Shown piece by piece: positions 1-54,650 of a stretch of DNA of 64,000 bases; the first letter of the stretch is position 1, and each line of letters opens with the position of its first letter. The DNA is taken from the NCBI GenBank assembly GCA_038087875.1, contig CM075982.1, positions 12,152,001 through 12,216,000 of the forward strand, given 5' to 3'. Made by a program: the position numbers and the translations under genes. The notes beneath the pieces are model-generated. The model did no database searches. It saw only the letters and a list, made by a program, of their open reading frames with translations, and was not told where the DNA came from. The DNA comes from Malacoraja senta (Eukaryota).

Positions 1-215
1 TGTGACCGTGTGGTTTCCTCCCACATCCCAAGTGCTTGTGGGTTTGTAGGATAAATGGCCTCTGAAAAGTGCCCCTAGTGTGTCGGGAGCGGTTGCAAAA
101 GTAGGATAACATAGAACTAGTGTGAATGGGTGATTAATGGTCATTGTGGACTCTGTGTGCTGAAGCGCCTGTTTGCCATGATGTATCATTCAATTAATCA
201 ATCAATTTCAATCAA
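1..215 (+). mobile_element. tRNA-derived SINE (V-SINE/HE1-like), 3' part, duplication copy A
   Basis: ttcctcccaca core, CR1-like tail and (TCAA)n; matches 2640-2995. Confidence 0.85.
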
Positions 216-1370
216 TAATGTCATTTAGTTCAGGTTCCCGAAGTCTTTGCAAACAGGCTTTGTGCCTTAACATGTGTCACCATATGGTATATCCAAAGTT
301 TCATTTAAAGATCTGGAATAATGTGGAATAATAATAGAAAATACTTGAAATAGCAGGTAGGCAGGGCAATAGGGAAGTGGGAAGAGGGAGGGAGGGCGAA
401 TGGGCAGGATCATGCTTACATCATTTTTAAGTAATGGAAAAGTTAATTAAAAATGCACCTAATTAGTGATTAAAATAATTAAACAAAAGCAGCTGTTTTT
501 AAAGAAAGAAAATATCTGTTTTCTCTCATCATCCATTGACCTGTATTCCCCCTAGAATGAAAGGGTCTTAGATCCTGCAACAGATCTGACCTGATGTAGC
601 ATTTAACTGGTAAATTTCAAACATAGTAGGGAATTCTAACAAGACTGAGTTCCCATGCTGGAGGAAATTACCAAATCAATTTCAGACCAGATATGCATAA
701 GGTCATTAAAACGATTGAATGTTGGTCAACCTGCTTGGAACCACTGGCAAAATTTAGCAAGCTATGTCCATTATTTCAGATCAGAACTTACATCAGGATT
801 GTCCTTGACCACGATAGTTGACTCGGCTTCTCCTGGACAATATTGGTAGTTCAATACAATTGTGTGAATTTCTCAGTTTATGTACAGCTAAGTTTAGGGA
901 TACCCCTGCAAACACACAAGATCTGAGCTTATCATGTTATGTTAGCCATTTCCTGGCCATGCTGTGAGTTGAACATCTTTGGAGCAGCATCTTGTTTTCT
1001 GCCATGGATTCCTTTCTCCAATAACTTGGTACAGAATCCATGAGCTCTTTCTTGCATAGGGACAGTAGGCTTTGAGAAAGAGAAAGTTAAATTATTACCT
1101 ATTTAAATTATTTGTATTAATTGAATGCTTTTAGTTTATCTTGTTTATGATGTTGGGGAGGCCAACTCCATTAACTTCACCAGAAAAACAAATATGTTGT
1201 GCTACAGGTCTTCATTTAGTGCCAGTTATAATGCTTCACATAATATATGGAGTAGATTTTCACAAAATAACTCCAGTAATCCTCATTTAAAATTCAGATC
1301 AACTAAAATTGCTCGATTTGTAACACAATTAATAAATAATCCACCTCTTTGACTATTTGCGCATGCATAG

Positions 1371-1406
1371 CCACCTATGCAGCAGCCAAAGCTGCAAAAT
1401 ATGCAG
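1371..1406 (+). CDS. ELN: ELN cross-link exon ATYAAAKAAKYA (36 nt) with a rearranged acceptor
   Basis: catag|ccacctatgca...tatgcag|gtaagt. Frame preserved, but the acceptor lacks the polypyrimidine tract of the paralogous exon at 5421. Confidence 0.65.
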
Positions 1407-2141
1407 GTAAGTCTCCCTATTTTCAATAGAAAAATCTGAAAATGCTGGCAATTTAAAATTGAAATTTATAATACTGAACAATACTCAGCAGGCCCAACAG
1501 CTATGGAGAACAAACATAGGGTCTCAGGTCTCCAGTATATTATAACGCTTCTTACAGGAATCAACAAGGTTGTATTCAAAGGAATCCCACAATTGGTATT
1601 AAAATAATAAAGGACAAAATTGGGAAGTATTTTTTAATGTTCAGTTTAACCTATACCTCATTTTATTGTAAGTGGCAGTGGAAATTTGGAACATCATTCT
1701 CCCAAACTACTATGATTATCAATCAACTGAAAGTTAGTTAGATTTGTATGTTAAATTAATGAAATCAAATTTTGTGACAGGAAATGAGCTATAGATTAAG
1801 CTGAACACAGGCTTAAGGTGATGTTCTTAAGTTATCCTCTTCCTGTACTTGAATGCTGCCGTTGCTCACTAGTGTTGTTTATTTATGCCAGTTTAGAGCC
1901 ATGACCACATATACTGGCATTGTAGGATATTACAGAATAGTTCCAGTCGTACTGTCTATGGCTGAAATGCTTTTGAACGTTTGATCACAATCCACTTTCG
2001 CTTCTCACAGCAAACAAAAGCTGCCTTCCAAGCCTGGTAATAGATGACCCAATAACACTGCAGTCAATTGTCCATAGTCTATGAGTTTTTTAAATAATTT
2101 AATATACTAATGATTGGAATTCTACTCTATTGTCATTCCAG

Positions 2142-2249
2142 GGGCTGTGCCAGGAGGAGTTCCTGGTGGTGTACCTGGAGGCTATCCAGGGGGTGTACCT
2201 GGAGGCTATCCAGGGGGTGTACCTGGAGCTGCATTTGGAGGCCTTGCAG
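2142..2249 (+). CDS. ELN: ELN hydrophobic exon [36 protein letters not shown] (108 nt)
   Basis: cattccag|gggctgtg...cttgcag|gtgatc; VPGG/YPGG repeats. Confidence 0.93.
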
Positions 2250-2639
2250 GTGATCTTTTCTCTTTTAAAACCTTTTCATTTTTATTGAAATGTCTTGAGT
2301 GCTAAATTTCAGTTTTACCATCCATTCACGTTATATCAATATTACAATTTTTAAGTAGATCCTGAATCCTATGGCCATGACAGACACAAGACCAAAGAGG
2401 AAATGAATGTTCGAGGGGACATTTGATCTCTTATTTGTCTGGCTTTGGAACCAAGAAACCTGTGGTGCAAATAATCATAGGTAAAGGCTTAGAAAGGTTT
2501 TCATTGCCATTTTCAGGAAAAATTGCCCTTCAGCTTGGCATGCAAGAAGCTTATTCAATTTTCTTACCTCAAGTATTTCACTTGTGAAACTACATTGGTA
2601 TCAGGTGTCCTGGCCAAAACAATTTAAAGAAATTAGTAT

Positions 2640-2995
2640 GGGGCAGCACACCGGGGCAGCTGATAGAGGCGTTATCTCACAGCGCCAGATAACTGGGTTT
2701 GATCCAGACTTCGGGTGCTGCCTGTGTGGAGTTTACACGTTCTCCTTGTGACCGTGTGGGTTTCCTCCGGGTGCTCTGGTTTCCTCCCACATCCCAAGCG
2801 TGTATGGGTTTGTAGGATAAATGCCCTCTGAAAATTGCCCCTAGTGTGTAGGGAGTGGTTGCAAAAGTAGGATAATATTAAACTAGTGTGAACGGGTGAT
2901 TGACGGTCATTGTGGACTATGTGCCGAAAGGCCTGTTTGTCATGATGTATCTTTCAATCAATTAATTAATCAATCATTCAATCAATCAATCAATA
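2640..2995 (+). mobile_element. tRNA-derived SINE (V-SINE/HE1-like), copy B
   Basis: Degenerate A/B boxes (gggtttgatcc), gtgggtttcctccgggtgctctggtttcctcccaca core, (TCAA)n tail. Confidence 0.87.
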
Positions 2996-3840
2996 ATGTC
3001 ATTTAGTTTAGGTTCCTGAAGTCTTTGCAAACAGGCTTTATGTTTTAGTATGCCTTAACATGTGTCACCATATGGTATATCCAAAGTTCCATTTAAAGAT
3101 CTGGAATAATGTGGAATAATAATGGAAAATACTTGAAATACTCAGCAGGTAGGCAGGGCAATAGGGAAGTAGGAAGAGGGAGGGAGGGCGAATGGGCAGG
3201 ATCATGCTTTACATCATTTTTAAGTAATGGAAAAGTTGATCAAAAATGCACCTAAATAGTGCTTAAAAGCATTAAACTAAAGGAGCTGCTTTCAAAGAAA
3301 GAAAATATCTGTTTTCTCTCATAATCCATTAACCTATATTCCCCCTAGAATGAAAGGGTCTTAGATCCTGTAGCAGATCTGATCTGATGTAGCATTTAAC
3401 TGGTAAGTTTAAAAAATAGTCGGAAATTCTAACAAGACTGATCTCCCATGCAGGACTGAAATGACCGAATCAATTTCAGACCAGATATGCTAAGGTTATT
3501 AAAACGATTGAATGTTGGATTCAACCTGATTGGAAACACTGGCAAAATTTAGCAAGCTATGTCCATTATTTCAGATCAGAACTTACATCAGGATTGTCCT
3601 TGACCATGAAAGTTGACTCAGCTTCTCCTGGAAAATATTGGTAGTTCAATCCAAACTGTGTGCATGACTCAGTTTATATATAGCTAAGTTTAGGGATACC
3701 CCTGCAAACACATAAGTTCTGAGCTTACCTGATTATGTTAGCCATTTCCTGGCCATGCTTTGCAGTTGAACATCTTTGGAGCAGTACCTTGTTACGTGCC
3801 ATGTAATCCTTTCTCAGATAACCTGGGACAGAATCCATGA

Positions 3841-4060
3841 TACACAAAAGTGCTGGAGAAACTCAGCGGGTGCAGCAGCATCTATGGAGCGAAGGAAATA
3901 GGCAACATTTCGGGCCAAAACCCTTCATCAGTCTGAAGAAGGGTTTCGGCCCGAAACGTTGCCTATCTCCTTCGCTCCATAGATGCTGCTGCACCCGCTG
4001 AGTTTCTCCAGCACTTTTGTGTACCTTCGATTTTCCAGCATCTGCAGTTCCTTCTTAAAC
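3841..4060. mobile_element. Penelope-type fold-back insert (~90-bp arms) with a hammerhead core at 3933-3960
   Basis: Palindrome 3841-4023; 13-bp TSD acagaatccatga (3828-3840 / 4061-4073); empty site at 1031-1043. Confidence 0.85.
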
Positions 4061-4493
4061 ACAGAATCCATGAGCTCTTTCTTGCATAGGGACTATGGGC
4101 TTTGAGAAAGAGAAAGTTAAAGTATTACCTATTTAAATTATTTGCTTTATTTTAACGCTTTTAATTTATCTTGTTTATGATGTTGGTGAGGCCAACTCCA
4201 TTAACTTCACCAGAAAAACTAATATGTTGTGCTACAGGTCTTCATTTAGTGCCAGTTATAATGCTTCACAGAATATATGGAGTAGATTTTCAAGAAATAA
4301 CTCCAGTAATCCTCATTTAAAATTCAGATCAAATAAAATTGCACAATTTGAAACACAATAAAATAATTAATCCACCTCTTTGGCTATTTGCTCATGCTGC
4401 TCAATTCTTTATTATTTGGTATACAAAATATCAGTAATTCCCTGGCATTTACAAGAAGATAATTTACATGTAACTTATGATAATTAATGGGTA

Positions 4494-4705
4494 GGTAGAC
4501 GCAAAATGCTTGAGTAACTCAGTGGGACAGGCAGCAACACTGGAGGGAAGGAATGGGTGACGTTTCGGGACGAGACCCTTCTTCAGTCTTGAGTCGAAAC
4601 GTCACCCATTCCTTTCCACCAAAGATGCTGCCTGTCCCGCTGAATTACTCCAGCATTTTGTGTCTACCTTCGATTTAAACTAGCATCTGCAGTTCTTTCC
4701 TACAC
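4494..4705. mobile_element. Penelope-type fold-back insert, second subfamily
   Basis: Inverted arms; 14-bp TSD ataattaatgggta (4480-4493 / 4706-4719); empty site at ~10687-10700. Confidence 0.85.
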
Positions 4706-4783
4706 ATAATTAATGGGTAAATAGCTGTTTTATAGTATTTTTCTTAATTCGTAATATTTTAAAGTTTGATTTAATAGTGTTAA

Positions 4784-5083
4784 TAGCCCTGTCCCACGGT
4801 ACGAGTTCATTCCAAGAGAGGTAAGCACGGAAAGTGAACGTAGCGGGTACGTCGGAGCTCGGGGATGTCACTTAGTGGCTCCTAACGCTAACGGCAGGTA
4901 CTCGGGAAGACTCGCTAACGGCAGGTAAGTACGGGAAGACTCGTGAAGATTTTTCAACATGTTGAAAAATGTCCACGAGAGTCCCGAGTGCCGACGAGTG
5001 GCCATTACCGTAAATCTCCGAGTTCGAAGCAGGGCAAACTCGGGAGAGCTCATGGAATGAACTCGTACCGTGGGACAAGGCTA
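4784..5083. mobile_element. MITE (non-autonomous DNA transposon), ~300 bp, flanked by TTAA
   Basis: TIRs tagccctgtcccacggtacgagttcattcca / tggaatgaactcgtaccgtgggacaaggcta; ttaa at 4780-4783 and 5084-5087. Confidence 0.88.
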
Positions 5084-5420
5084 TTAATTGGAAAAGTATT
5101 ATGGTGATGTGATAGTAAATTACAAATTCAATCATAAGAAATTCCTATTATCCAAAACCATTGGTGATTTTATAAAATTAATTTGGAGGTTTTGGAAGAT
5201 TTTTTTATCATTATTAGCTGGAGACAGTGCAAAATGTCATGAGGCAGCAACTCCTTGTGATTTTGTGATGGTAGTGTAGTGGATTCAGCACCAATTCCTT
5301 AAATGTAATTGCAAATGCTTGTTTTGTGCTCCTCCAAGTTGAGCCTTTCAGAAATGTGATCTAATATATTATTTGCACAATATGAGGCTAAATTCTCTTA
5401 TCAATCTTTTTTCATTGCAG

Positions 5421-5456
5421 GTGGCTATGCAGCAGCCAAAGCTGCAAAATATGCGA
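5421..5456 (+). CDS. ELN: ELN cross-link exon GGYAAAKAAKYA (36 nt)
   Basis: ttttttcattgcag|gtggctat...tatgcga|gtaagt. Confidence 0.9.
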
Positions 5457-6182
5457 GTAAGTCTTCCTATTTTCAATAGAAAACACAGAAAATGCTGGTA
5501 ATTGAAAATTGAAATTTATAATACGGAACAATACTCAACAGGCCCAACAGCTATGGAGAACAAACGTAGGGTCTCAGATTTCCAGTATATTATAACGCTT
5601 CTTCCAGGAATCAACAAGTTTTTAGTCAAAGGAATCTACAATTAGTAGTAAAATAATTAAGGACAAAATTGGGAAGTCATTTTTAATGTTCAGTTTAATC
5701 TATACCTCGTTTTAATGTAAGTGGCAGTGGAGTGGTCAGTTGATTAATAATGATCAATCAACTGAAAGTTAGCACTAAGATTATTTGAGTTTTGTATATT
5801 AAATTAATGAAATCAAATTTTGTGACGGGAAATAAGCTATAGATTAAGCTGAACACAGGCTTGAGATGTGTTCTTAAGTTATCTTCCTGAACTTGAATTG
5901 TGCTGTTCCTCACTAGTGTTTTTTTATTTATGCCAGTTTAGCGTCATGAGCACATATACTGGCATTGTAGGATGTTGCAGAATAGTTCCAGTCGTTCTGT
6001 CTGTCTGAAATGCTTTTGAACGTTTGATCTCAATCCACTTTTAGTTCTCACAGTAAACAAAAGCTGCCTTTCAAGCCTGGTAATAGATGACCTAATAACA
6101 CTGCAGTAAATTGTCCATAGTCTGCGTCTTTTAAATAATTGAATATACTGATGATTGGAACTCTACTGTATTGTCATTCCAG

Positions 6183-6290
6183 GGGCTGTGCCAGGAGGAG
6201 TTCCTGGTGGTGTACCTGGAGGCTATCCAGGGGGTGTACCTGGAGGCTATCCAGGGGGTGTACCTGGAGCTGCATACGGAGGCCTTCCAG
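6183..6290 (+). CDS. ELN: ELN hydrophobic exon (R/G)[35 protein letters not shown] (108 nt)
   Basis: cattccag|...cttccag|gtgatc; only 3 nt differ from exon 2142-2249. Confidence 0.93.
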
Positions 6291-6666
6291 GTGATCTTTT
6301 CTCTTTTAAAACATTTTCATTTTTATTGAAATGTCTTGAGTGGTAAATTTCAATTTTACCATCCCTTCACTTTATATCAATATTACAATTTTAAGTAGAT
6401 CCTGAATCCTATGGCCAAGACACACACAAGACAAAGAGGAAATGAATGTGCTAGGGACATTTGATCTCTAATTAGTCTGGCTTTGGAACCAAGAAACCTG
6501 TGGTGCAAATAATCATGGGTACAGGCTTAGAAAGGTTTTCATTGCCATTTTCTGGAAAATTGCAAACTCCAGGAAGCACATTCAAATTTTTTTACTCAAG
6601 TATTTCACTTGTGAAACTACATTGATATCGGGTGTCATGGCCAAAACAATTTAAAGAAATTAATAT

Positions 6667-7005
6667 GGGGCGGCACACTGGCGCAGCTGATAGAGACGTT
6701 GTCTCACAGCGCCAGAGAACTGCGTTTGATCCTGATGTCGGGTGCTGCCCATGTGGAGTTTACGTGTCCTCCTTGTGACCGTGTGGGTTTCTTCTGGGTG
6801 CTCGGGTTTCCTCCCACATCCCAAGTGCCTGTGGGTTTGTAGGTTAAATGGCCTCTAAAAATTGCCCCTAGTGTGCAGGGAGTGGTTGCAAAAGTAGGAT
6901 AGCATAGAACTAGTGTGAACGGGTGATTGAAGGTCATTGTGGACTCTGTGTGCCGAAGTGCCTGTTTGCCATGATGTATCTTTCAATCAATCATTCAATC
7001 AATCA
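6667..7005 (+). mobile_element. tRNA-derived SINE, copy C
   Basis: Paralog of 2640-2995 with A box tggcgcagctg. Confidence 0.87.
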
Positions 7006-7089
7006 GTAATGTCATTTAGTTTAGGTTCCTGAAGTCTTTGCAACCGAGCTTTGTCTTTTCGTATGCTTTAACATGTGTCATCATATGGT

Positions 7090-8184
7090 TTTGGGGAAGG
7101 GTATTGACACGGATAGAGAACCGGTTGGCGGACAGGAAGCAGAGAGTAGGAATTCATGGGTCCTTTTCAAAATGGCAGGCAGTGACTAGTGGGGTGCCAC
7201 AAGGCTCGGTGCTGGGATGCCAGTTATTTACAATATATATTAACAATTTAGACGAGGGAATTAAATGTGAAATCTCCAAGTGTGTGGATGACACAAAGCT
7301 GGGTGGTAGTGTGAGCTGCGATGAGGATGCTATGAGGCTGCAGGGTGACTTGGATATGCTGGGTGAGTGGGCAGATGCATGACAGATGCAGTATAATGTG
7401 GATAAATGTGAGGTTATCCACTTTTATGGCAGATTATTATCTGAATGTCAGATTAGGAAAAGGGGAGGTGCAACGAGAGTGTGCTTGTACATCAGTCATT
7501 GAAAGTTAACATGCAGGTACAGCAGGCAGTGAAGAAAGCTAATGGCATGTTGGCCTTCATTGTGAGTGGATTTGAGTTTAGAAGCAAGGAGGTCCCACTG
7601 CAATTGTACAGGCCCTGGTGGGACGGTATCTGGAGTATTGGGTGCAATTTTGGTCTCCTAATTTGAGAAAGGACATCATTGCTATTGAGGGAGTGCAGCG
7701 TAGGTTCATCAGGTTAATTTCCGGGATGGTGGGACTGACCTATGATGAAAGAATGGGTCGACGGGGCTTGTGTTCACTGGAATTTAGAAGGATGAGAGGT
7801 GATCTTATTGAAACATATAAGATTATTAAGGGTTTGTCAAGCTAGATACAGGAAAAATATCCCCGATGTTGGGGAGTCCAGAACCAGGAGTCACAGTTTA
7901 AGAATAAGGTGTAGGCCATTTAGAACTGAGATGAGGAAACATTTTTTCTCCCAGATACTTGTGCATCTGTGGAATTCTCTGCCACAGAAGGTAGTGGAGG
8001 CTAATTCACTGGATGTTTTCAAGAGAGAGTTAGATTTATCTCTTAGGGCTAAAGGAATCAAGGGATCTGGGGAAAAGCAGGAATGAGGTACTGATTTTAG
8101 ACGATCAGCCATGATCATATTTAATAGCCATGCTGACTCGCAGGGCCAAATGGCCTACACCTGCACCTACTTTTCTTTGTTTCT
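7090..8184 (+). mobile_element. 5'-truncated CR1 LINE (RT C-terminal half plus 3'UTR), private to copy C
   Basis: VTSGVPQGSVLG, DDTKLGG, YWVQFWSP peptides; TSD atatggt (7083-7089 / 8185-8191); other copies have the empty catatggtatatcc site. Confidence 0.93.
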
Positions 8185-8734
8185 ATATGGTATATCCAAA
8201 GTTTCATTTAAAGATCTGGAATAATGTAGAATAATAATAGAAAATACTTCAAATACTCAGCAGGTAGGCAGAGCAATAGGGAAGTAGGAAGAGGGAGGGC
8301 TGGAAGACGAATGGGCAGGATCATACTGGACATCATTTTTAAGTAATGGAAAAGTTAATTAAAAATGCACCTAATTAGCGATTTAAAAATATGAAACTAA
8401 AGCAACTGTTTTCAAAGAAAGAAAATATCTGTTTTCTCTCATAATCCATTAACCTATATTCCCCCTAGAATAAGAGGGTCCTAGATCCTGCTGCAGATCT
8501 GACCTGATGTAGCATTTAACGGGTAAATTTCAAACATAGTAGGAAATTCTAACAAGACTGAGCTCCCATGCAGGAGTAAATGACCAAATCAATTTCAGAC
8601 CAGATGTGCATAAGGCCATTAAATATATTGAATGTTGGTCGACCTGATTGAAACCATTGGCAACATTTAGCAAGCTATGTCCATTATTTCAGGTCAACTT
8701 ACAGCAAGATTGGCCTTGACCAGAAGATTGACTC

Positions 8735-8862
8735 TGTGGAAGGGTCTCTACCCAAAACGTCACCAATTCCTTCACTCCATAGATGCTGCCTCACCTGCTG
8801 AGTTTCCCCAGCATTTATGTCTACCTTCAATTTGTCCAGCATCTGCTGTTCTTTCTTAAACA
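8735..8862 (+). mobile_element. Penelope-type short insert, single arm
   Basis: gaagggtctctacccaaaacgtcacc...gcatctgctgtt; TSD attgactc (8727-8734 / 8863-8870). Confidence 0.8.
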
Positions 8863-9082
8863 ATTGACTCAGCTTCTCCTGGAAAATATTGGTATTTTAA
8901 TCCAAACTGTGTATCGATTCAGTTTATGTATAGCTAAGTTTCCGTTCGCTCAGTAAACAAATGCTGCCTTTCAAGCCTGGTAAGAGTTGACCTGATAACA
9001 CTGCAGTAAGCTGTCCATAGTCTGAGTCTTTTAAATAATGTAATATATTGATGATTGGAATTCTGCTCTCTTGTCATTTCAG

Positions 9083-9154
9083 GTGCTGTGCCAGGAGGTG
9101 TACCTGGAGGCTATCCAGGGGGTGTACCTGGAGCTGCATATGGAGGGTTTCCAG
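9083..9154 (+). CDS. ELN: ELN hydrophobic exon [24 protein letters not shown] (72 nt)
   Basis: catttcag|gtgctgtg...tttccag|gtgatc; shorter paralog of the 108-nt exon. Confidence 0.92.
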
Positions 9155-9333
9155 GTGATCTTTTCTCTTTTAAAACCTTTTCGTTCTTATTGAAATGTCT
9201 TTAGTGCTAAATTTTGAGTTTTACCTTCCAATCACTTTATGCAAAAATTACAATTTTAAAGTAGACCCTGTTTTCCATAATGTACCAGTATCTTTCAATC
9301 AATCATTCAATCAATCAGTCATTTAGCTTAGGT

Positions 9334-9424
9334 ACACAAAAGTGCTGGAGAAACTCAGCGGGTGCAGCAGCATCTATGGAACGAAGGAGATAGGCAACGT
9401 TTCGGGCCGAAACCCTTCTTCAGA
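9334..9424 (-). mobile_element. Penelope-type short insert, single arm, intact hammerhead core on the minus strand
   Basis: Reverse complement reads gtCTGAAGAagggtttcggcccGAAAcgtt; TSD catttagctt(a/g)ggt (9320-9333 / 9425-9438). Confidence 0.85.
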
Positions 9425-10916
9425 CATTTAGCTTGGGTTCCTGAAGACTTTGAAAATAGGCTTTGTTGTTTTTGTATGCCTAAACATGTGTCCATATGGA
9501 ATATCCAAAGTTTCATTTAAAGATCTGGAATAATAATAGAAAATACTTGCAATACCTAGGAGGTAGGTAGGGCAATAGGGAAGTGGGAAGAGGGATGGAG
9601 GGCGAATGGGCAGGATCATGATTTACATCATTTTTAATTAATGGAAAAGTTAATTAAAAATGTACCTAATTAATGATTAAAAGCATTTAATTAATGCAGC
9701 TGTTTTCAACGAAAGAAAATATCGGTTTTCTCTCACAATCCATTAACCTATATTACCCATAGAATGAAATTGTCAAATCCTGCTGCAGATCTGACCTGAT
9801 GTAGCATTTAACTGGTAAATTTCAAACATAGTAGGAAATTCTAACAAGACTGAGCTCCCATGCAGGAGTGAATTTACCAAATCAATTTGAGACCAGGTGT
9901 GCATAAGGTTATTCAAACAATTAAATGTTGGTTTACCTGATCGGAACCACTTGCAAAATTTAGCAAGCTATGTCCATTATTTCAGGTCAGAACTTGCATC
10001 AGGATTGTTCTTGACCATGAAAGTTAACTCAGCTTTTCCTGGAAAATATTGGTATTTCAATCCAGACTGCGTGCATTACTCAATGTATATATAGCTAGGT
10101 TTAGGGATACCTCTGCAAACACATAGGTTCTGAGCTTACCAGGTTATGATGGTCATTTCCTGACCATGCTCTGCTGTTGAATATCTATGGAGCAGCATCT
10201 TGTTTTGTGCCAAGCAATTTTTTCTCAGATAACTTAGTGCAGAATCCATGAGCTCTTTCTTTGCAGGATCGTAGGCTTTGAGAAAGAGATAGTTAAATAT
10301 CTATTTTAATTATTTGTATTTATTTAATGCTTTTAGATTAAAATGGATTTGTGTGTTTTAGATTATCTTGTTTATGACATTGGTGAGGCCAACTCCATTA
10401 ACTTCACCAGAAAAACAAAATGATTGTGCCAGTTACAATGCTTCACAGAATATGTGCAGTAGATTTTCAAGAAAGAACTCCAGCAATCCTCATTTAAATT
10501 TCAGATGAAATAAAATTGCACGATCTGTATCACAATAAAATAAACGCTCCACCTCTTTGGCTATTTGCTCATGCTGCTCATTTTTTTAATTATTTGGTAT
10601 ACAAAAGATCAGTCTATTTGGTATACTAAAGATCAGTCTTTTTTACCCCTGGCAATCACAAGAAAATAATTTACATATGACCTAGGATAATTAACGGGTA
10701 AATAGCTGTTTTATAGTATTTTTCTTAATATCTTAAAGTTGGATACATTTTTGTGAGTTCGATTTAAACAACTTCGGTTAACATTGTATATTTCTGGTGT
10801 GTAGTTTTTCTGCAATGTAGTTGTGCTGTTGGCTTTCAAAACATTAGTCATCATTTGACTGTGTATGCAACTGATCGCTGTTCCATTATAACTTGTCCAT
10901 TCCTTTGATGTTGCAG

Positions 10917-10955
10917 GTGGTGCATACAGGTCTGCAAAAGCTGCTAAATATGGAG
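10917..10955 (+). CDS. ELN: ELN cross-link exon GGAYRSAKAAKYG (39 nt)
   Basis: gttgcag|gtggtgca...tatggag|gtacga. Confidence 0.9.
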
Positions 10956-12475
10956 GTACGATTTCCACTTTTGTAATTTACATATGATTCAAATTGTTAA
11001 GGTAGGGAATATTAATAAGCAAAATCTTATTAAGCATAAAATCTGCAGAACAATTAACTTTAGAATCTCTATGACCTCTAGGGAATACATTTCAATACTG
11101 GTTAGCGTTTTTCACAAAAGATAGACTCTTCCAAATATCACGATCTGTTTTCAAGATAATTTTAAAAGATTAAAATTTCTCAATTTGGCTGCAATGAAAC
11201 TAATTTTGAGGAATTGGTGTCTAATACTGAAGTTAGTTTAGTTTATTATTGCCATGTATACTGAGGTACAGTGAAATGTTTTTTTTGTGTAGTGACAAGA
11301 ATAACGTATTATGTTATCAGATTACACAGAAAATTCGGAATTCAAGACAGGCACTTCATATTGTTATTTTGTCTTAACTATAAAAGGCTTTATTAACAGA
11401 GAAGCCACGCAAGAAATAAGCAGTGAAATTTCCAGTCATGTGTAAACCCATGTTCTATCATAGGTAGCAAAGGGGGATCTTCTATATTTAAAAATATGCA
11501 TCCAAGAAACTATACCAACTAACAAAGTCATATTTAAATAAAGAGAGTGCATAATGAGGTTGAAACTACTAAATTCTCTGCATAACACTCTACCTATTGT
11601 AAATGTTTTCTTTCATATTGCATTATGCAAATAAACCGATTTTTAATTGTTCCATTCCAATCTATGATCTTGTTAGCATTTGATGAAATTAATGAGATAC
11701 TATTTGCAAACGATAAGATGGCATAATCTTTCAATTAATATCAGGAAATACATTTTCCATATGGGAAGTATTGGAAATTTGCGTCCAAATATCATATAGC
11801 CACTGGATGAATTTAAATTTAGCAATGAAAGTATTCGATTTTTAATAGGAAGAGTATCAAATAATTCCATTCAAATCTGGTAAATTGAATTAAAATATAC
11901 AATAGAGTGACCAAATTTTAAGGTTACAGTATATACTAATTTAGTCTGGACTGGCTATCTATTGTTTCTCTATTTAGACCCTATTACAACTTTTTGATAC
12001 CCAGTGTAGATCGTGTTGTATGTTATTATTGATATATAGGCTGCTGCAATACTTGTAATAATACTGTGAGATTTTTAAAAAAATACAGTTTTAGGGATAT
12101 GGCATACCTAGCAAGGGTAGAATTTATTGCCCATACCTAATCACCCTTGAAAAGATTGTGGTGAGTTATTTTCTTGAAAACTTGCAGACTTTCTAGTGAA
12201 GGTACATCCACAATTCTGGTGCATTGAATTACACCAAACATTTAAATACAGCAAAGACCTCAGAATGATAGTGATCTGAGGGTATTTGAATATATGATCA
12301 AGTTCCACACAAATTGTCTTTTTAGCAAAAGAAAGTAGCATTCAGCTTATCTTAATAATACTACAAGTTATGATCTATTACGGAGGTCATGTTTATTGGG
12401 GGAAAAATGAATCTAAAGTAAGTGAAACTAGTTAGGAAGATGCCAGAAAAGTACAGAAATCACTAAGTAATCTGT

Positions 12476-12687
12476 GTAGGAAAGAACTGCAGATGTTGGT
12501 TTAAATTGAAGGTAGACACAAAATGCTGGAGTAACTCAGCGGGTCAGACAGCATCTCTGGAGAGCAGGAATGGGTGACGTTTCGGGTCGAGACCCTTCTT
12601 CAGTCTCGACCCGAAGCATCACCCATTCCTTCTCTCCAGAGATGCTGCCTGACCCGCCGAGTTACTCCAGCATTTTGTGTCTCCCTT
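12476..12687. mobile_element. Penelope-type fold-back insert
   Basis: Inverted arms; 15-bp TSD cactaagtaatctgt (12461-12475 / 12688-12702). Confidence 0.87.
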
Positions 12688-12866
12688 CACTAAGTAATCT
12701 GTTGAGTTAATGATACAATTCATTCTAGAGGATTAAAAGTAAGAGATGGGGTATGTGCCTCAAGCCTCGGTTGGAGTACTTTTTCAGTCATTGTGACAAA
12801 AATATTAAAGCGGCAACAAAGAGCACAAAAGAAAATACAAGCTTCACATGGCCTCTCCAACGTTGT

Positions 12867-13023
12867 AGAGTCATACAGCGTGGAAACAAGCCCTTTGCCC
12901 CAACTTGCCTACACCGAGGGATATGAGCCAAATGCAGATAGGTGCGACTAATGTTTATGGGGCATGTTTGTCGGCGTGGGCAAGTTGTGCGCTGAAGGAC
13001 CGGTTTCCATGCTGTATGATTCT
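12867..13023. mobile_element. Inverted pair of CR1/SINE 3' tails
   Basis: agagtcatacagcgtggaaac...gtttccatgctgtatgattct. Confidence 0.7.
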
Positions 13024-13076
13024 GTGACACCGATTTTATGACTAATGATTGCATAGCTCTTGTACTGACATTCCAG

Positions 13077-13136
13077 GTGGTCCTGGAGGAGCTGGACTTG
13101 GAGGACTTCCAGCGGGGTTTTTTGGAGGTGTTCCAG
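13077..13136 (+). CDS. ELN: ELN hydrophobic exon GGPGGAGLGGLPAGFFGGVP (60 nt)
   Basis: cattccag|gtggtcct...gttccag|gtaaca. Confidence 0.92.
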
Positions 13137-14567
13137 GTAACATTTATTTAATCATTAGCATTATTGAAATGAATGCAAGATGCACAAATTATCGTTGACA
13201 GTTTTATTAAACACTCTGTCAACATGTTGGGATACTACAATGATAGCCATTCACTTTATGCCAATGCTACAGATATAGTTGTCGAATCTGAATCCTCAGT
13301 AGAATACTGCTTAGCCTAACATACAGATTAAAAAGTGATCTTCTCTAGATAGCCTACTTGCCTTATTTGGAACTAAGAAGCTTATATAAATTGGAGTCCT
13401 AAATCTCAGCAGCCTTGGGTTCAGAAATTTGCTTATGTCATTTTCATTTTTCAGACAAATGCACAGAATGTATACACATATTTCCAGTCAGGAGCACTCT
13501 TCCAGAGATACTGAAAACATTTATTCTATCGGTGTCAAGGTGAACACCAGACCTATTTAAAATAAATCAATAAATTATGTACTTCACTGTCCTATTAATC
13601 CTAAAGGACCACTGAATAGTTTTGAGACTCCCAGCTTATAATTCAAAATGGTCAACATCAGGAGAAACTTTATTAAAACCCTATCTAAAGGTTGGATTAA
13701 GCAATCTTTGAGCAGTAAATTCTTTATCTGTGCAAAGATTTTCTAAAACAGTAATGCAAAAACAGCAACTTTATGCTCAAGCACTATTCCAATACTTCAG
13801 CACATTTCCTAACCTGGGATGTTAATGCAACACTTTTCTATTCACAATACTACATGGCAAATTGGAATTGGAAAAACTCCCCCACAGTCAATATAACCAA
13901 AGAAATAGGTTGTTTGTGAAACCATGCCGTATGGAAATTGTCTGATCCACTTAAATATATGTATGCTATGGTAACTTCACTTCATGAGTGAAGTTTGGTT
14001 GCAAAGTATTTTAAATCATCTGGAGAATGTGACAATTTGTTTTAAGGAAACTTTTCAATCAAACGTTTCGTCATTAGTAGGTCAAGAGTGAAAAGACCCA
14101 AACTTGGTTATGACTGCTATTTGGGCAATTCTAAGATACTGTCAGTGACTTACAAACCTGTTTTCCATGCAAAGTACATTGGAAGCCATATTGATAAAGG
14201 ATAAATGGATGCACACTAAGTATCTGCTAGAAGGCATTGACAAGGCAAAAATTGACTGGATCACGTTCAATCTGGCCCGTGTCTCTCATATGCCTCCCGT
14301 GGGACTCAGAAGTTTCATAACAATGCAGTTCCCAATCTCCTCAAGACCTCGCTGCTGCAGTCTTTCTATGAGGCAGAACAAGCTGGGAGGGGATTAGGCA
14401 GTAAAACATTTGGCCCTGCCTTCAAATTTCCCTATAGATCTGCTCACAAGCCATAAAATCAAAGTCCTCTTCCACTGTCTCCTAATGCCCCTGCCAATCT
14501 GAGACATTTAGAGACAGTTAAAATATATTTCAAGAAGTAAAAAAAGAATAATTTAATAACCCATTTC

Positions 14568-15849: not shown

Positions 15850-15885
15850 GTGGATATGCTGCAGCTAAAGCTGCTAAATATGCAG
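15850..15885 (+). CDS. ELN: ELN cross-link exon GGYAAAKAAKYA (36 nt)
   Basis: ctgtag|gtggatat...tatgcag|gtaact. Confidence 0.93.
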
Positions 15886-18701: not shown

Positions 18702-18785
18702 GGAGAGTACCAGGAGGCATTCTCGGAGCACTAACTGGAGGCTTTCCTGGAGGTGTACCTGGAGGTGTTTTAGCACGTCTTCCAG
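18702..18785 (+). CDS. ELN: ELN hydrophobic exon [28 protein letters not shown] (84 nt)
   Basis: cattccag|ggagagta...cttccag|gtaatt. Confidence 0.92.
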
Positions 18786-18954
18786 GTAATTGATTTCTAA
18801 TAATCTTTTAGATACTTGCTGTTTCAATTGTGTTAGCAAGGTATAGCATGATTCTCCCACACATACGTGATGTTAAATTATATCTATTAAGTGAATGTTG
18901 ATAGGTGAAAGTGTTTCCACATTTCATTTGAAAATTGAAAATTCTGGAGGTCAG

Positions 18955-18981
18955 GAAGTGTCCCAGGGGAAAGATACGCAG
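18955..18981 (+). CDS. ELN: Candidate ELN micro-exon GSVPGERYA (27 nt)
   Basis: tcag|gaagtgtc...tacgcag|gtaata; phase 1, 3n, contains VPG, good donor but poor polypyrimidine tract. Confidence 0.35.
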
Positions 18982-19185
18982 GTAATATTTCAGACAATGA
19001 CCTATCAACAGTATCAAATACTTCCAGGTTGTACGTTTCCATAGTTTGATAATCTGCATTAATATTGACTTTTTTTCCCCGAAATAGTGTTTATCTGAGT
19101 GGAGGCAATGCTGTTGATCATTGTTCCACAGTCTATGTAGCTGGACTTTGCTGGATTATAACTTGTCAATCTTCTGTCATTACAG

Positions 19186-19221
19186 CTGGATATGCAGCAG
19201 CTAAAGCTGCTAAATATAGAG
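19186..19221 (+). CDS. ELN: ELN cross-link exon AGYAAAKAAKYR (36 nt)
   Basis: cattacag|ctggatat...tatagag|gtaaca. Confidence 0.92.
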
Positions 19222-21416: not shown

Positions 21417-22657
21417 GTATTGTGATGTGTCATCAACAAGTTTAACTTCATTGTGATAAATTTAATGAAATATGCAGATATTATTCCCATGATTTTGCAA
21501 TTCAGTCCATCAATAAATTCATTCTCTGCCATTGTTCATTTTGTATCAAGCAACTATTAAAATACAAGTGTGGCTTGACTCTGCTCTTAGGGCTTTATTT
21601 AATACAAAGACATAATGTAGTCATGTCCCCTGTAGGAGACTTGAATCCTCTAACTGCCCAGCTAAGCACAAGCAAACTATTGTGTTATTTAATGATGGGA
21701 GGTATTGATAGGATAGGCAATCAGAACCCTTTTCACATGGTGGAAATGTCAGAGACAGGAGCACATAGATTTAACGTGAGAGGAGCAGAGTTTAAAGGAT
21801 GCAGGTATTGGGGGCCAAAGGGCTTGTTCCTTTGCTGTACGATTTTATGTTATCCCCATACATACTATAGCTGTCTTGTTTGCTATTATTTTGCTTCTCA
21901 ATCTTACTTCAAGAAAGTAAAGTATTAATTTCCTCTACTGAGTTGGATGCCTTGTTGCTATTATTAATTCAGTAAATTTGTGCAACCATTTTCAGGAACT
22001 ATTACTTCATTTATAAGGAAATGTCCAAAAGGGAACGCAATTATCCAGATGAGGCCAAACTAATAGATTTTGCACAATTATCACTTTGTTTTAAATTTAT
22101 CCTCTCATATTAAGCTATCTGAAAATAAAAAAATTGCAGATGTTGCAAATATGAAGTAAAAAAAAAAGAGAAAATGCTTGGTCAATTCAACCAGAAACAT
22201 CTGTTTCTCTTTCCACAGATATTGCCTGATCTACTGAGTGTTTTCACTGTTTCTGTTTTCTGTTTCTGCATTCTTGATAACAGTCAATTTTAAATAGCTG
22301 CAGGCTTAAAGTTCAGTGCATGTAAAAGCATGAGATTGATATTACAGTGGGATGCTAAAACCACTTTGCACTTGGGTCACTGAAAGATTGTTTCACTTTT
22401 CCAATTTAGCCCAGCATCTAGACCAGGTCTGGAGTTTCTGGGGAGAGAGAGTGGGCAGCTGTCATAGGCCAAAAGATGGGTTTTGGCTCGGGCATCTGAA
22501 GAGAGTGGGAATGAGAAAATAATTTAAAACATTATTAATGGCAAGAAATAAGAAACAAAGCATGGCATTCTTGAACAGAATGAACAAGCACATGTATAGT
22601 AATGGGATTCTAACATTGTTAGAATAAAGTTTAATTACTTGTCCATCCTTTGATCCG

Positions 22658-22696
22658 GGGCTGGAGCTGCTGGGGCTAAAGCTGCAAAATTTGCAG
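22658..22696 (+). pseudogene. ELN: ELN cross-link exon GAGAAGAKAAKFA with a mutated acceptor (CG instead of AG); either a pseudo-exon or spliced from a cryptic GAG at 22664-22666
   Basis: acttgtccatcctttgatccg|gggctgga...tttgcag|gtaaat; sits in the expected cross-link slot between two hydrophobic exons. Confidence 0.7.
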
Positions 22697-23197
22697 GTAA
22701 ATCTATTTCTGAATTTTCTACATCATACTATCACATTCTTTTTAAGTTCCTAATAGTTCTTTTTATTCTTAGACACAACACAAGACATTAAAACACAATG
22801 AACTTTTGTTTATTAAGCTCCTGGAAAAAGGAGCTAAAAGTGCAGCAAATCAAAACAGAGATGTGAATTAAAGGGTCCTGGATGTGACTATGTTGTTTAA
22901 GTCATAACATATGCCAGACCCATTATTCATTGCTCCACTTTGTGTCATCTCTTTGTCCCCTATATGTTTCTGTATCTCTGTAAAATGCTGTGTCTTCCAG
23001 ACTGATCATTTCAGAGGCTTCAATCAAGCTATTAGACTACATTGGGATCTGGGGACATGCCTGGACATTTCAGTGTTCCTCCTCTTCACGTGTACAAACC
23101 CATTCAGCAGAAAGTCAATAATACATTGCTGTTTTTACATAGGTAGCAACCTATAAACAAAGGGCGGCACGGTGGCGCAGCGGCAGAGTTACTGCCC

Positions 23198-25172: not shown

Positions 25173-25208
25173 GTGGAGCAGGTGCAGCTAAAGCAGCTAA
25201 ATATGGCG
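25173..25208 (+). CDS. ELN: ELN cross-link exon GGAGAAKAAKYG (36 nt)
   Basis: attgtag|gtggagca...tatggcg|gtaaat. Confidence 0.92.
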
Positions 25209-33533: not shown

Positions 33534-33632
33534 ATCAGTCTGAAGAAGTGTTTCGGCCCGAAACGTTGCCTATTTCCTTCCCTCCATAGATGCTGCTGCA
33601 CCCGCTGAGTTTCTCCAGCATTTTTGTGTACC
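33534..33632 (+). mobile_element. Penelope-type short insert, single arm
   Basis: agtCTGAAGAagtgtttcggcccGAAAcgtt; 13-bp TSD taatgattaacct (33521-33533 / 33633-33645). Confidence 0.85.
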
Positions 33633-34171
33633 TAATGATTAACCTTCAGGATTAAATATATTACACTATTGGCAAAACTGGATACCAAGCAACATTTTTT
33701 TTATTGGACATCCCATAAGGGTACATCAATCAGTGTGTTTATGTCAATTCTATTTATAAAGATGGTTTGGATTCAATCTTCCAGATTTTGCCATGTAAAC
33801 AAATGGCAGCAGCCCCCACTGTTATATTTATATCAACAGATAGAATGTCAGAATGGGTCTGGTTCTGATGGTCGGACTGATGTAAGTGTAAGGGGGTGAT
33901 GTTATTGTTGCAATGGCACGGGCACACAGGGCTTAGCTTAGAATTTTATGGCTTTATATGGAAATTTATGTCAATTTCATTGTTGTAGCCTTTTGAATTA
34001 ATTTGTTAGCTGTTCAATGACAAAACAAAATCTATCCAAATAAAGCTTGCAACAGGTTTGCAAAGTTGTCTCGACTTTATTTCTCTAATGCTTTGATAAA
34101 ATAACTGAAAAAGCACAAACATATATCTAAAAAAATGTTAAGCATGAGTTACTATTTATTGGATTGAACAG

Positions 34172-34795: not shown

Positions 34796-34831
34796 GCAGT
34801 TATGCCGCAGCTAAAGCAGCTAAATATGGAG
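34796..34831 (+). CDS. ELN: ELN cross-link exon GSYAAAKAAKYG (36 nt)
   Basis: cattgcag|gcagttat...tatggag|gtaagt. Confidence 0.93.
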
Positions 34832-37330: not shown

Positions 37331-37496
37331 ATGGTGACGTTTCGGGTCGAGGCTCTTCTTCAGACTCTGAAGAAGGGTCTCAACCCGAAACGTCACCCAT
37401 TCCTTCTCTCCAGAGATGCTGCCTGTCCCGCTGAGTTACTCCAGCATTTTGTGTCTACCTTCAATTTAAACTAGCATCTGCAGTTCTTTCCTACAC
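37331..37496. mobile_element. Penelope-type insert with a short inverted 5' arm; hammerhead core on both strands
   Basis: ggtgacgtttcgggtcgaggctcttcttcag|act|CTGAAGAagggtctcaacccGAAAcgtcacc. Confidence 0.85.
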
Positions 37497-37524
37497 ATAA
37501 TAAATTCTTATCACTGCATTGTAG

Positions 37525-48902: not shown

Positions 48903-48949
48903 GCTCCCCTTGTGCAATGGGCAAATACTGTGGCAGAAGGAGAAAATAA
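48903..48949 (+). CDS. ELN: ELN terminal coding exon GSPCAMGKYCGRRRK*
   Basis: tttctgaag|gctcccct...agaaaataa; two Cys plus a basic tail, typical of the tropoelastin C-terminus. Confidence 0.96.
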
Positions 48950-52640: not shown

Positions 52641-54650
52641 ATAAGTTCATAAGTCATAGGAGCAGAATTAAGCTACTTGGCCCATCGAGTCTACTCTGCC
52701 ATTCAATCATGACTGATCTATCTTTCCCTCTCAACCCATTCTCCTGCCTTCTTCCCATAACCCTTACTAATCAAAAATCTGTCAATTTCTGCCTTAAAAA
52801 TACCCAATGACACCCTCCACAGAAGTCTGTGACAATTAATTCCACAGATTCACCATCCTCTAACTCAAGAAATTCCTCCTCATCCCATTTCTAAAGGTAT
52901 GTATTTTTATTCTGAGGCTCTGGCCCCAGACTCTCCCACTAGTGGAAACATCCTTTCCACATCCACTCTATCCAGGCCTTTCACTATTCAGTAAGTTTCA
53001 ATGAGGGCCCCTTCTTCCTTCTAAACCCCAGTGAGTACAGGCCAAGTGTAATCAAACTCTCATCATATGTTAACCCAATCATCCCCAGGTTCATTCTTGA
53101 AAACCTCCTCTGTACATTCTCCAAAGCCAGCACATCCTTCCTCATATATGAAGCTCAAAGCTGCTCACAATAATCCAAATGGGGTCTGACCAGTGCCTTA
53201 TAAAGCCTCAGCAGTACATCCCTGTTTTTATATTCTAGTCCTCTCAAAATAAATGCCAACATTGCATTTGTCATCTTTCCTACCGATTCAACTTGCAAAC
53301 TAACCTTTTTGGAATCCTGCACCAGCACTCCCAAGCCCCTTTCCACCTCCAATTTCTGAATCCTCTCCCATTTAGAAAATAGTCTACGCTTTTATTCCAA
53401 CTACCAAAATGCATGACTGCACACTTTACTATGCTGTAATCCATCTGCCACTTATTTGCACATTCTCCAACCTGTCCAAGTCTTTTTGCAGAGTCCCTGT
53501 TCTCTCTACACTACCTGCCCTTCCACCTATCTTTGTATCATCTGCTAACTTGGCCACAAAGCCTTCAATTCCCTCATCCAAATCATTGATATACATGGTG
53601 AAGAGTAGTGGCCCCAGCACAGACCCCTACAGAACACCACTGGACACTGGCAGCCAACCAGAAAAAGACCCCTTTTTCCCACTCTTTGACTTCTGCCATT
53701 AGCCAACCTTCTATCTATACTAATATCTTACCTTTAATACTCTCATCTTCTTTAGCAGTCTCATGCACAACATCTTATCAAAGGCCTTCTGAAAATCCAG
53801 GTAAACAACATCCACTGACTCTCCTTTATCTATCCTGCTATTTACTTCCTCAAAGAATTCCAACAGATTCGTCAGGTAAGATCTCCCCTTCACAAAACAA
53901 TGCTGACTTCAGCCTATTTCATCATGTATTCAGAAACCTCCTCCTTTATAATGGACTCTAAAATCTTACCAACCACTGATGTCAGGCTAACCAGCCTATA
54001 GTTTCCACTCTTCTGCTTCTCTCCCTTCTTGTACAGCAGAGCAACATTTGCAAACTCTGGGACTGCTCCCGACTCCAGTGATTCTTGAAAGATCACCACT
54101 AATGCCTCCACAATCTCTAAAGCTACCTCTTTTAGAATCCTGGAGTGTACTCCATCTGGTCCAGGTGAGTTATCCAACTTCAGACTTTTCAGCTTCTCAA
54201 GCACCTACTCCTTTGGAAAAGCAACTCCACTAACTTCTGCCCCTGACTCTCGTGAATTTCAGGCACATTGCAGGTGTCTCAGAATCTCCTGTCATTGCTG
54301 CTCCACTGTCATTCCTACCAGGCTGCATTTTCAATCAATTTTAGCCAGCTCCTCCCTCATGCTGCTGTAGCTATCTTTACTCAACAGTAATACCGACACA
54401 TCTGATTTAATCTTCCCCCTCTCAAACTGCAGATTGAATTTTATCATAACATGGTCACTACCTCCGACGAATTCCTTTACCTTAAAACTCCCGAATCAAG
54501 TTTGTTACACAATACCAAATCCAGATTAATTTTCCCTAGTAGGCTCGACTACAAGCTATTCTAAGAAGCCACCTCGTAGGCACTCTACATATTCCTTTTC
54601 TTGGGATCCAGTACCAACCTGATTTTCCTAGTTTACCTGCATATTGTGCA
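52640..54650 (-). mobile_element. CR1 LINE fragment, ~2 kb
   Basis: SPGPDGVHSRILKE, GNYRLVSLTSVVGKILE, ADDTKIGG, LVRPHLDYC. Confidence 0.93.

What the first reader, a model, noticed from the sequence alone, without database searches (positions are those of the whole stretch)
1..10745. Elastin growing by tandem duplication of a cross-link + hydrophobic exon pair
Seen: four highly similar copies of the same intron sequence. Each copy carries different TE insertions, with TSDs and empty sites in the sister copies. The 108-nt exons in copies A and B differ at 3 nt, versus 3 differences in the 41 intronic nt just upstream. Known: all-phase-1, 3n exons let tropoelastin gain and lose exons, and exon-pair duplication has been proposed for fish and amphibian elastins. 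Inference: this is a recent lineage-specific expansion under purifying selection or gene conversion, with its history readable from the nested TEs. The array probably continues upstream of the window.
Basis: partly seen in the sequence, partly recalled or inferred. Interest (0 to 1): 0.8.

Follow-up and report, generated by a model that had tools for sequence, protein, structure and literature searches.

The report
Skate elastin exon-pair tandem array
A skate's elastin gene really does hold several head-to-tail copies of a 'cross-link exon plus stretchy exon' unit, but the copies are old and partly decayed, and this way of lengthening elastin is already known from birds, turtles and a ray.

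Summary
Window 1-10745 is the 3' edge of a tandem array inside a tropoelastin gene on the + strand. The gene's identity rests on alternating KAAK and GVPGG exons, all 3n and phase 1-1, and a C-terminal ...CAMGKYCGRRRK* exon at 48.9 kb. One unit is about 3.3 kb without transposable elements (TEs): intron, 36-nt cross-link exon, intron, 108-nt hydrophobic exon. Four intron copies, three hydrophobic exons and two cross-link exons are visible. Six private TE insertions are present; five have target-site duplications and empty sister sites.

- The copies differ by 7-15% (K2P), so they are not recent, and mis-joined haplotypes are excluded.
- The tree is an unresolved star. No TE is shared by a subset of copies, so the TEs do not order the duplications.
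- Exons diverge less than introns (3.6% vs 8.3%, p about 0.05). Against the local flanks the difference is not significant.
- The array is decaying. Unit C lost its cross-link exon by deletion and its hydrophobic exon is 36 nt shorter. Unit A lost its cross-link acceptor, and a substitute AG sits in frame.

Exon-pair replication in tropoelastin is published for passerines, turtles and the devil ray. This is a new member of a known kind. Expression and cross-species tests could not be run.

The parts
1..1366 (+). Intron copy X0. It is the 3' part of the intron that follows an unseen upstream hydrophobic exon. No private TE in the visible part.
   Evidence: Colinear with 2777-4397 (88-93%), with 6805-8941 and with 9425-10574.
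1371..1406 (+). Cross-link exon CL_A, 36 nt, (A)TYAAAKAAKYA(G). Its original acceptor and the intron stretch equivalent to 4397-5425 are deleted. A substitute AG at 1369-1370 keeps the 36-nt length and the frame.
   Evidence: GCATAGCCACC in A is the reverse complement of GGTGGCTATGC at the start of CL_B. The donor is CAG|gtaagt.
2142..2249 (+). Hydrophobic exon HP_A, 108 nt, [35 protein letters not shown].
   Evidence: Acceptor ...tgtcattccag, donor CAG|gtgatc, 3n, phase 1-1.
2250..4772 (+). Intron copy XA. It holds a SINE-like element at 2640-2823 that is shared with other copies, and two private TEs.
3841..4073 (.). Private TE insertion 1 (220 nt plus one TSD copy), a snap-back element. TSD ACAGAATCCATGA.
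   Evidence: Empty sites at 1031-1043 (X0) and about 10240 (XC). Copies of this family in the window are 94-99% alike.
4494..4719 (.). Private TE insertion 2 (212 nt plus TSD ATAATTAATGGGTA).
   Evidence: Empty site at 10687-10700 (XC).
4784..5083 (.). TTAA-flanked MITE with 39-nt terminal inverted repeats. It lies at the right-hand end of unit homology.
   Evidence: Inverted repeats 4780-4818 and 5049-5087 are 95% alike. No sister site survives for comparison.
5088..5420 (+). Intron stretch W' upstream of the cross-link exon. This is the only surviving copy. It ends in the acceptor context tcaatcttttttcattgcag.
   Evidence: No significant similarity to 10750-10916 (local score 53.5 against 48 +/- 6 in shuffles).
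5421..5456 (+). Cross-link exon CL_B, 36 nt, (G)GYAAAKAAKYA. Its last base is A, so the junction codon with HP_B reads AGG (Arg).
6183..6290 (+). Hydrophobic exon HP_B, 108 nt, ...GAAYGGLP.
6291..8941 (+). Intron copy XB. It ends at a deletion junction that removed the rest of the intron, the cross-link exon and most of the next intron.
   Evidence: 8864-8941 matches 3613-3691, and 8939-9133 matches 6039/6044-6245.
7090..8191 (.). Private TE insertion 3 (1.1 kb, TSD ATATGGT). It is 80% like 40527-39414 on the other strand.
   Evidence: Empty sites at 282-288, 3070-3076 and about 9490.
8735..8870 (.). Private TE insertion 4 (128 nt plus TSD ATTGACTC).
   Evidence: Empty sites at about 818-824, 3613-3619 and 10024-10030.
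9083..9154 (+). Hydrophobic exon HP_C, 72 nt, [23 protein letters not shown]. It differs from A and B by one 36-nt in-frame indel. Its splice sites are intact. No cross-link exon precedes it.
9155..10745 (+). Intron copy XC, the last of the array. It lacks the stretch equivalent to 2364-2947.
9333..9437 (.). Private TE insertion 5 (92 nt plus TSD CATTTAGCTTrGG).
   Evidence: 99% like one arm of TE insertion 1.
10917..10955 (+). First exon outside the array: a 39-nt cross-link exon, GAYRSAKAAKYG.
   Evidence: Its flanks show no homology to the unit.
48903..48949 (+). C-terminal exon of the same gene, SPCAMGKYCGRRRK followed by a stop.

Best explanation
Window 1-10745 is the 3' end of a real, old tandem array inside a skate tropoelastin gene.

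Origin (inferred). A segment of about 3.3 kb was copied head to tail. It ran from the intron upstream of a 36-nt KAAK cross-link exon, through that exon, a 0.73-kb intron and a GVPGG/GYPGG hydrophobic exon, into the following intron. Further copies were most likely added by unequal crossing-over between units, in one burst or in quick succession. Every elastin exon is 3n and phase 1-1, so each added or lost exon keeps the reading frame.

Later history (shown).
- The copies drifted apart by 7-15%.
- Each copy picked up its own TE insertions.
- Three deletions followed. One removed the cross-link exon of unit C, so two hydrophobic exons now lie next to each other. One removed the acceptor and upstream intron of CL_A, where a reverse-complement patch supplies an in-frame AG. 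One removed part of the last intron copy.

Only unit B is still a complete pair.

Use of the exons (inferred, about 60%). The three hydrophobic exons and CL_B are still spliced into mRNA.
For: - Colinear unit homology at E = 0.
- Exon anatomy and splice sites.
- TSDs plus empty sites for five private TEs.
- K2P 0.074-0.147 between the intron copies.
- Star tree.
- Deletion junctions.
- Right-hand boundary of homology at about 10745.
- Gene identity: six 36-nt KAAK exons sharing an acceptor context and a C-terminal Cys...Cys-RRRK exon.
- All three hydrophobic exons keep an open frame, AG/GT and an in-frame indel. Exon divergence is about half that of introns.
- Predicted skate tropoelastins are 1161 and 1226 aa, against 797-1081 aa in other batoids.
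- Exon-pair replication is a documented elastin mechanism.
Against: - No RNA evidence could be obtained, so use of any copy is inferred.
- The exon/intron contrast is only borderline (p about 0.05) and is not significant against the local flanks (p = 0.21).
- The synonymous to non-synonymous split is 3:3.
- The left end of the array lies outside the window, so unit number and the original breakpoint are unknown.
- End branches of the tree are unequal (0.034-0.040 against 0.070-0.074), which a simple burst with equal rates does not explain.
Confidence: 0.85

Rival explanations
1. Assembly artefact: the copies are mis-joined haplotypes or a falsely expanded repeat.
For: Nothing found here supports this. 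Tandem repeats are in general prone to mis-assembly.
Against: The copies differ by 7-15%, far above allelic divergence. They also carry six different private TE insertions and three different deletions.
Confidence: 0.02
2. One reading: a recent, lineage-specific expansion held similar by purifying selection or ongoing gene conversion.
For: - The exons are less diverged than the introns.
- The first 93 nt of HP_A and HP_B are identical.
- The two 5' intron copies have end branches half as long as the two 3' copies, with no shared derived sites. Conversion from unseen upstream units could produce that pattern.
Against: - Introns differ by 7-15% in a slowly evolving lineage (PMC8455134).
- No long near-identical tracts appear in sliding windows.
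- The low-divergence zone around the hydrophobic exon is only 270 nt at 95% identity.
Confidence: 0.1
3. Dead array: the duplicated exons are pseudo-exons that the spliceosome skips, and only sequence outside the array (or one unit) contributes to the protein.
For: - One cross-link exon is deleted.
- CL_A lost its acceptor and its conserved tcaatc...cattgcag context.
- CL_B ends in A, which gives an Arg junction codon.
- dN/dS is not clearly below 1.
Against: - All three hydrophobic exons keep an open frame, a polypyrimidine tract with AG, and the same GT donor after 7-15% divergence.
- The only length change is a 36-nt in-frame indel.
- Exon divergence is about half the intron divergence.
- The RefSeq skate models are the longest among batoids.
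Confidence: 0.2

Closest known systems
Additional replications of cross-link/hydrophobic exon pairs in amniote tropoelastin (passerine 18/19 pair, 4-8 copies; testudine 19/20 pair), Matrix Biol Plus 2025, PMC12554196 section 7.7
   Same: The same gene. The same unit type: one KA cross-link exon plus one hydrophobic exon with its introns. Head-to-tail copies. Made possible by all exons being phase 1-1.
   Different: The amniote copies are nearly identical at DNA level, so they are recent. The skate copies are 7-15% apart, loaded with TEs and partly deleted. The hydrophobic exon here is 108 nt and built on GGVPGGYPG.
[quoted passage not shown]
   Same: A batoid elastin lengthened by many copies of a 36-nt KAAK exon alternating with a short hydrophobic exon. 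The 36-nt cross-link exon size is identical.
   Different: The partner exon is 48 nt in the ray and 108 or 72 nt here. The published account is at the level of the protein and exon list. Intron homology, TEs and decay were not analysed there. Whether the arrays are orthologous is unknown.
The ancient 'replicated region' of tropoelastin (domains 15-29b), PMC12554196
   Same: The rest of this skate gene (exons at 10917-37656) has the same look: 36-nt KAAK exons with a conserved acceptor context, alternating with diverged hydrophobic exons.
   Different: In that region the intron homology is gone. In 1-10745 it is still readable.
Loss of tropoelastin exons 34 and 35 in primates
   Same: Whole elastin exons are removed by intronic deletions and the frame is kept, as with the lost cross-link exon of unit C.
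   Different: The primate losses were attributed to recombination between Alu elements. The junction here (8939-8941) shows only 2-3 nt of microhomology and no TE.

Membership tests
Tropoelastin (ELN) gene | Alternating lysine-alanine cross-link domains (KAAK/KAAAK) and hydrophobic G/V/P/A-rich domains, one exon per domain | tested here: met
   KAAK exons lie at 1371, 5421, 10917, 15850, 19186, 22667, 25173 and 34796. They alternate with GVPGG-type exons at 2142, 6183, 9083, 13077, 18702, 21369, 24830, 30348 and 37525.
Tropoelastin (ELN) gene | All exon borders phase 1-1 and exon lengths a multiple of 3 | tested here: met
   Every exon listed is 3n and is open only in the phase-1 frame.
Tropoelastin (ELN) gene | C-terminal domain with the only two cysteines and a basic RKRK-type tail | tested here: met
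   ...SPCAMGKYCGRRRK followed by a stop, at 48903-48949.
Tropoelastin (ELN) gene | Synteny with limk1 and septin4/5 (PMC12733013) | tested here: inconclusive
   ORFs at 50-64 kb show only LINE reverse-transcriptase fragments and low-complexity sequence. Spliced neighbouring genes cannot be recognised with these tools.
Tropoelastin (ELN) gene | Sequence match to annotated elastins | tested here: inconclusive
   Two protein searches with the exon returned only unrelated low-complexity proteins or nothing. The libraries seem to hold no elastins reachable with a 35-63 aa query.
Tandem exon-pair replication | Head-to-tail units with colinear homology through the introns as well as the exons | tested here: met
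Tandem exon-pair replication | Each unit holds both exon types | tested here: met
   Met in units A and B. Unit C lacks the cross-link exon because of a secondary deletion whose junction is visible at 8939-8941.
Tandem exon-pair replication | Copies are paralogues, not alleles or assembly duplicates | tested here: met
   7-15% divergence, private TEs with empty sister sites, and private deletions.
Tandem exon-pair replication | The replicated exons are included in mRNA | not testable with these tools
   No transcript data are reachable. The only pointers are intact splice signals, and RefSeq protein lengths taken from the literature.

The most novel reading that the evidence does not exclude
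What is seen here is the worn 3' edge of a much larger exon-pair array that runs on upstream and is still being homogenised. The two 5' intron copies have end branches half as long as the two 3' copies, yet share no derived sites. That is the pattern expected if unseen upstream units keep erasing private changes in the 5' copies. The number of elastin domains could then vary among skate individuals and species. The TTAA-flanked MITE sitting within 15 nt of the unit junction could mark the break that started the array. That would be a first candidate for the 'susceptibility element' that PMC12554196 says has not been identified.
Probability: 0.2. Interest if true: 0.5.

Novelty: new member of a known kind. 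Interest (0 to 1): 0.3.

Why it matters
Elastin's stiffness and recoil depend on the number and spacing of its cross-link and hydrophobic domains, and exon-pair replication is the accepted way in which the gene grew.

The skate array is a middle-aged example. Its intron homology is still readable, yet it is old enough to show what happens after growth:
- loss of a cross-link exon, which puts two hydrophobic exons side by side;
- an acceptor site rescued in frame;
- an in-frame resizing of a hydrophobic exon.

That makes it a useful worked example of exon birth and death in a cartilaginous fish. It does not change the picture of how elastin evolves.

Tried and rejected
- **Protein search, full library.** A phmmer search with the 35-aa HP_B exon against 1.84 billion representatives gave 57 hits. 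All were unrelated low-complexity proteins with no KAAK motif.
- **Protein search, word index.** A search with the 63-aa open frame around HP_B gave no hit. This closed the routes to a cross-species comparison and to transcript-derived proteins.
- **Does the array reach CL_D?** After removing the MITE, 5088-5420 shows no similarity to 10750-10916 beyond shuffled controls. The array therefore ends at about 10745.
- **Stepwise, clock-like duplication order ((X0,XA),XB),XC.** Rejected. It predicts about 20 shared (X0,XA) sites and only 4 were seen, against 3 and 3 for the other two splits.
- **First distance estimate for XC.** It was inflated by a misaligned stretch (XA 2873-3008) and was recomputed without it.
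- **CpG decay or clustering near TEs as the cause of the longer XB and XC branches.** Not seen.
- **tRNA and Rfam scans of 1-13000.** Nothing found.
- **Earlier scan notes on upstream units.** None found.
- **Neighbouring genes at 50-64 kb.** Not identifiable from ORFs.
Full report
**What is there.** The window has no N runs. Translating the + strand shows a series of short open stretches rich in G, V, P and A, alternating with KAAK motifs. A scan for exons bounded by AG and GT, of length 3n and open in the phase-1 frame, recovers an elastin-type exon chain:
- 1371-1406: cross-link, 36 nt
- 2142-2249: hydrophobic, 108 nt
- 5421-5456: cross-link, 36 nt
- 6183-6290: hydrophobic, 108 nt
- 9083-9154: hydrophobic, 72 nt
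- 10917-10955: cross-link, 39 nt
- further alternating exons out to 37656

The last coding exon, 48903-48949, encodes SPCAMGKYCGRRRK followed by a stop. That is the two-cysteine basic tail typical of tropoelastin. Six 36-nt cross-link exons in the window share the acceptor context tcaatc...cattgcag, although their introns are otherwise unrelated. This is the old 'replicated region' architecture described for amniotes (PMC12554196). An earlier scan note calls this genome a skate; I did not test that.

**The array.** Self-BLAST of 1-14000 and MAFFT alignments give four colinear copies of one intron: X0 1-1366, XA 2250-~4772, XB 6291-8941 and XC 9155-~10745. They also give three copies of the hydrophobic exon with its flanks and two copies of the cross-link exon with the 0.73-kb intron after it. 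Without transposable elements (TEs) one unit is about 3.3 kb. Homology between unit B and the last copy ends near 4765-4783 in B and 10745-10753 in the last copy. Beyond that point, the sequence leading to the 39-nt cross-link exon at 10917 is unrelated to the unit. The array therefore ends at about 10745. Because the window opens inside an intron copy, the array must begin upstream of the window.

**Transposable elements.** Five insertions are each private to one copy. Each has a target-site duplication, and the sister copies keep an intact empty site. They lie at 3841-4073, 4494-4719, 7090-8191, 8735-8870 and 9333-9437. A sixth element is a 300-nt MITE at 4784-5083 with 39-nt inverted ends and TTAA on both sides. 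It lies in the only surviving copy of that intron stretch. A SINE-like element (2640-2823, 6666-6852, and 1-60) is present in three copies and falls in a deletion in the fourth. However, no TE is shared by only some of the copies, so the TEs cannot order the duplications.

**Age and order.** K2P distances between the intron copies are as follows. The first estimate for XC was inflated by a misaligned stretch and was recomputed.

| Pair | K2P |
|---|---|
| X0-XA | 0.074-0.083 |
| X0 or XA against XB | about 0.108 |
| X0 or XA against XC | 0.112-0.135 |
| XB-XC | 0.147 |

On 655 columns shared by all four copies, the three possible splits are supported by 4, 3 and 3 sites. The maximum-likelihood inner branch is 0.0045 and unsupported. 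The tree is a star, which points to one burst or a quick succession of duplications.

The end branches are unequal: 0.040 and 0.034 for X0 and XA, against 0.070 and 0.074 for XB and XC. The singleton counts are 19, 18, 35 and 41 (p = 0.003). The singletons are evenly spread and show no CpG excess. A stepwise clock model would need about 20 sites shared by X0 and XA, and only 4 exist. I cannot explain the rate difference from this window. Erasure of private changes in the two 5' copies by conversion from unseen upstream units would fit it.

Cartilaginous fishes have slower substitution rates than bony vertebrates (PMC8455134). From my own knowledge, even at a mammal-like neutral rate 7-15% divergence means tens of millions of years. 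'Recent' is therefore not supported. The same divergence, together with the private TEs and deletions, rules out mis-joined haplotypes.

| Comparison | Exon | Intron | p |
|---|---|---|---|
| Both exon types against all well-aligned A-B intron | 5/140 (3.6%) | 177/2125 (8.3%) | 0.052 |
| HP exon against about 270 nt of local flanks | 3/108 | 18/267 | 0.21 |
| HP exon, B against C | 4/72 | 40/267 | 0.046 |
| HP exon, A against C | 5/72 | 39/268 | 0.11 |

The variable exon sites split 3 synonymous to 3 non-synonymous. Exon divergence is consistently about half the intron divergence. That fits mild constraint or short conversion tracts, but the evidence is weak.

**Decay.** Three deletions have reshaped the array.
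- In unit C, the stretch equivalent to 3691-6044 of unit B is missing (junction 8939-8941). This removed the cross-link exon, so HP_B is followed directly by HP_C.
- HP_C differs from HP_A and HP_B by a single 36-nt in-frame indel between CCAGGrGG repeats and keeps both splice sites.
- In unit A, the stretch equivalent to 4397-5425 is missing, taking with it the acceptor and the conserved upstream context of CL_A. The 11 nt GCATAGCCACC now at the junction are the exact reverse complement of GGTGGCTATGC at the start of CL_B. They place an AG so that the exon is again 36 nt and in frame. This agrees with an earlier scan note on 1345-1410.
- The last intron copy lacks the stretch equivalent to 2364-2947.

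CL_B ends in A instead of G, so its junction codon with HP_B reads Arg. Only unit B is a complete pair.

**Comparison with what is known.**
- Tropoelastin exon borders are all phase 1:1, and its central region is held to have arisen by replication of cross-link/hydrophobic exon pairs (PMC12554196).
- Recent extra replications of 4-8 copies are described in passerines and in turtles.
- In batoids, the lesser devil ray gene has 70 exons with many 36-nt and 48-nt exons and 24 KAAK cross-links (PMC12733013).
- The same paper's table gives predicted tropoelastins of 1161 aa for the little skate and 1226 aa for the thorny skate, against 797-1081 aa in other batoids. That is compatible with an expansion shared by skates but does not show it.

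The array described here is thus a further example of a published mechanism in an annotated gene. What it adds is the intron-level anatomy and the record of decay.

**What could not be done.** No elastin protein or transcript could be reached with the protein tools. Splicing of the copies, copy number upstream, and presence in other species all remain open.

Noticed in passing
window 4765-5090: The right-hand end of unit homology lies within 0-15 nt of the left TTAA of a 300-nt MITE (39-nt inverted ends). Only this unit keeps the junction, so it is unclear whether the MITE marks the original duplication break or arrived later.
   Followed up: partly
window 1345-1410: At the deletion junction in unit A, 11 nt (GCATAGCCACC) are the exact reverse complement of the first bases of the sister exon. 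This creates a new in-frame AG acceptor. A possible branch site CTTTGAC lies about 20 nt upstream.
   Followed up: partly
window 15850-15885, 19186-19221, 25173-25208, 34796-34831: Four more 36-nt KAAK exons share about 20 nt of upstream intron (tcaatc...cattgcag) with CL_B, although the rest of their introns is unrelated. This looks like a conserved branch-site and acceptor module from older rounds of replication.
   Followed up: partly
window 22640-22700: The cross-link exon here (AAGAKAAKFA) appears shortened to 30 nt. The usual acceptor position reads ...gatccgg with no AG, and the next usable AG lies 6 nt further in.
   Followed up: no
window 3841-4073, 9333-9437, 33535-33633, 12473-12689, 37337-37497, 4494-4719, 8735-8870: One family of short snap-back elements (core ...GTGCTGGAGAAACTCAGCGGGTGCAGCAGCATCTATGGA...) has at least seven copies in the window with 8-14-nt target duplications. 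Some pairs are 94-99% alike, so the family was active long after the exon-pair duplications.
   Followed up: partly
window 53914-54204 (-) and 63205-63633 (-): Open frames that look like LINE reverse-transcriptase fragments lie downstream of the elastin gene. There is also a G+C-rich stretch with simple GKGREG-type repeats at 58.2-58.8 kb.
   Followed up: no
window 18702-19221: An 84-nt hydrophobic exon and the next 36-nt cross-link exon are only 400 nt apart. Most introns in this gene are 2-5 kb.
   Followed up: no
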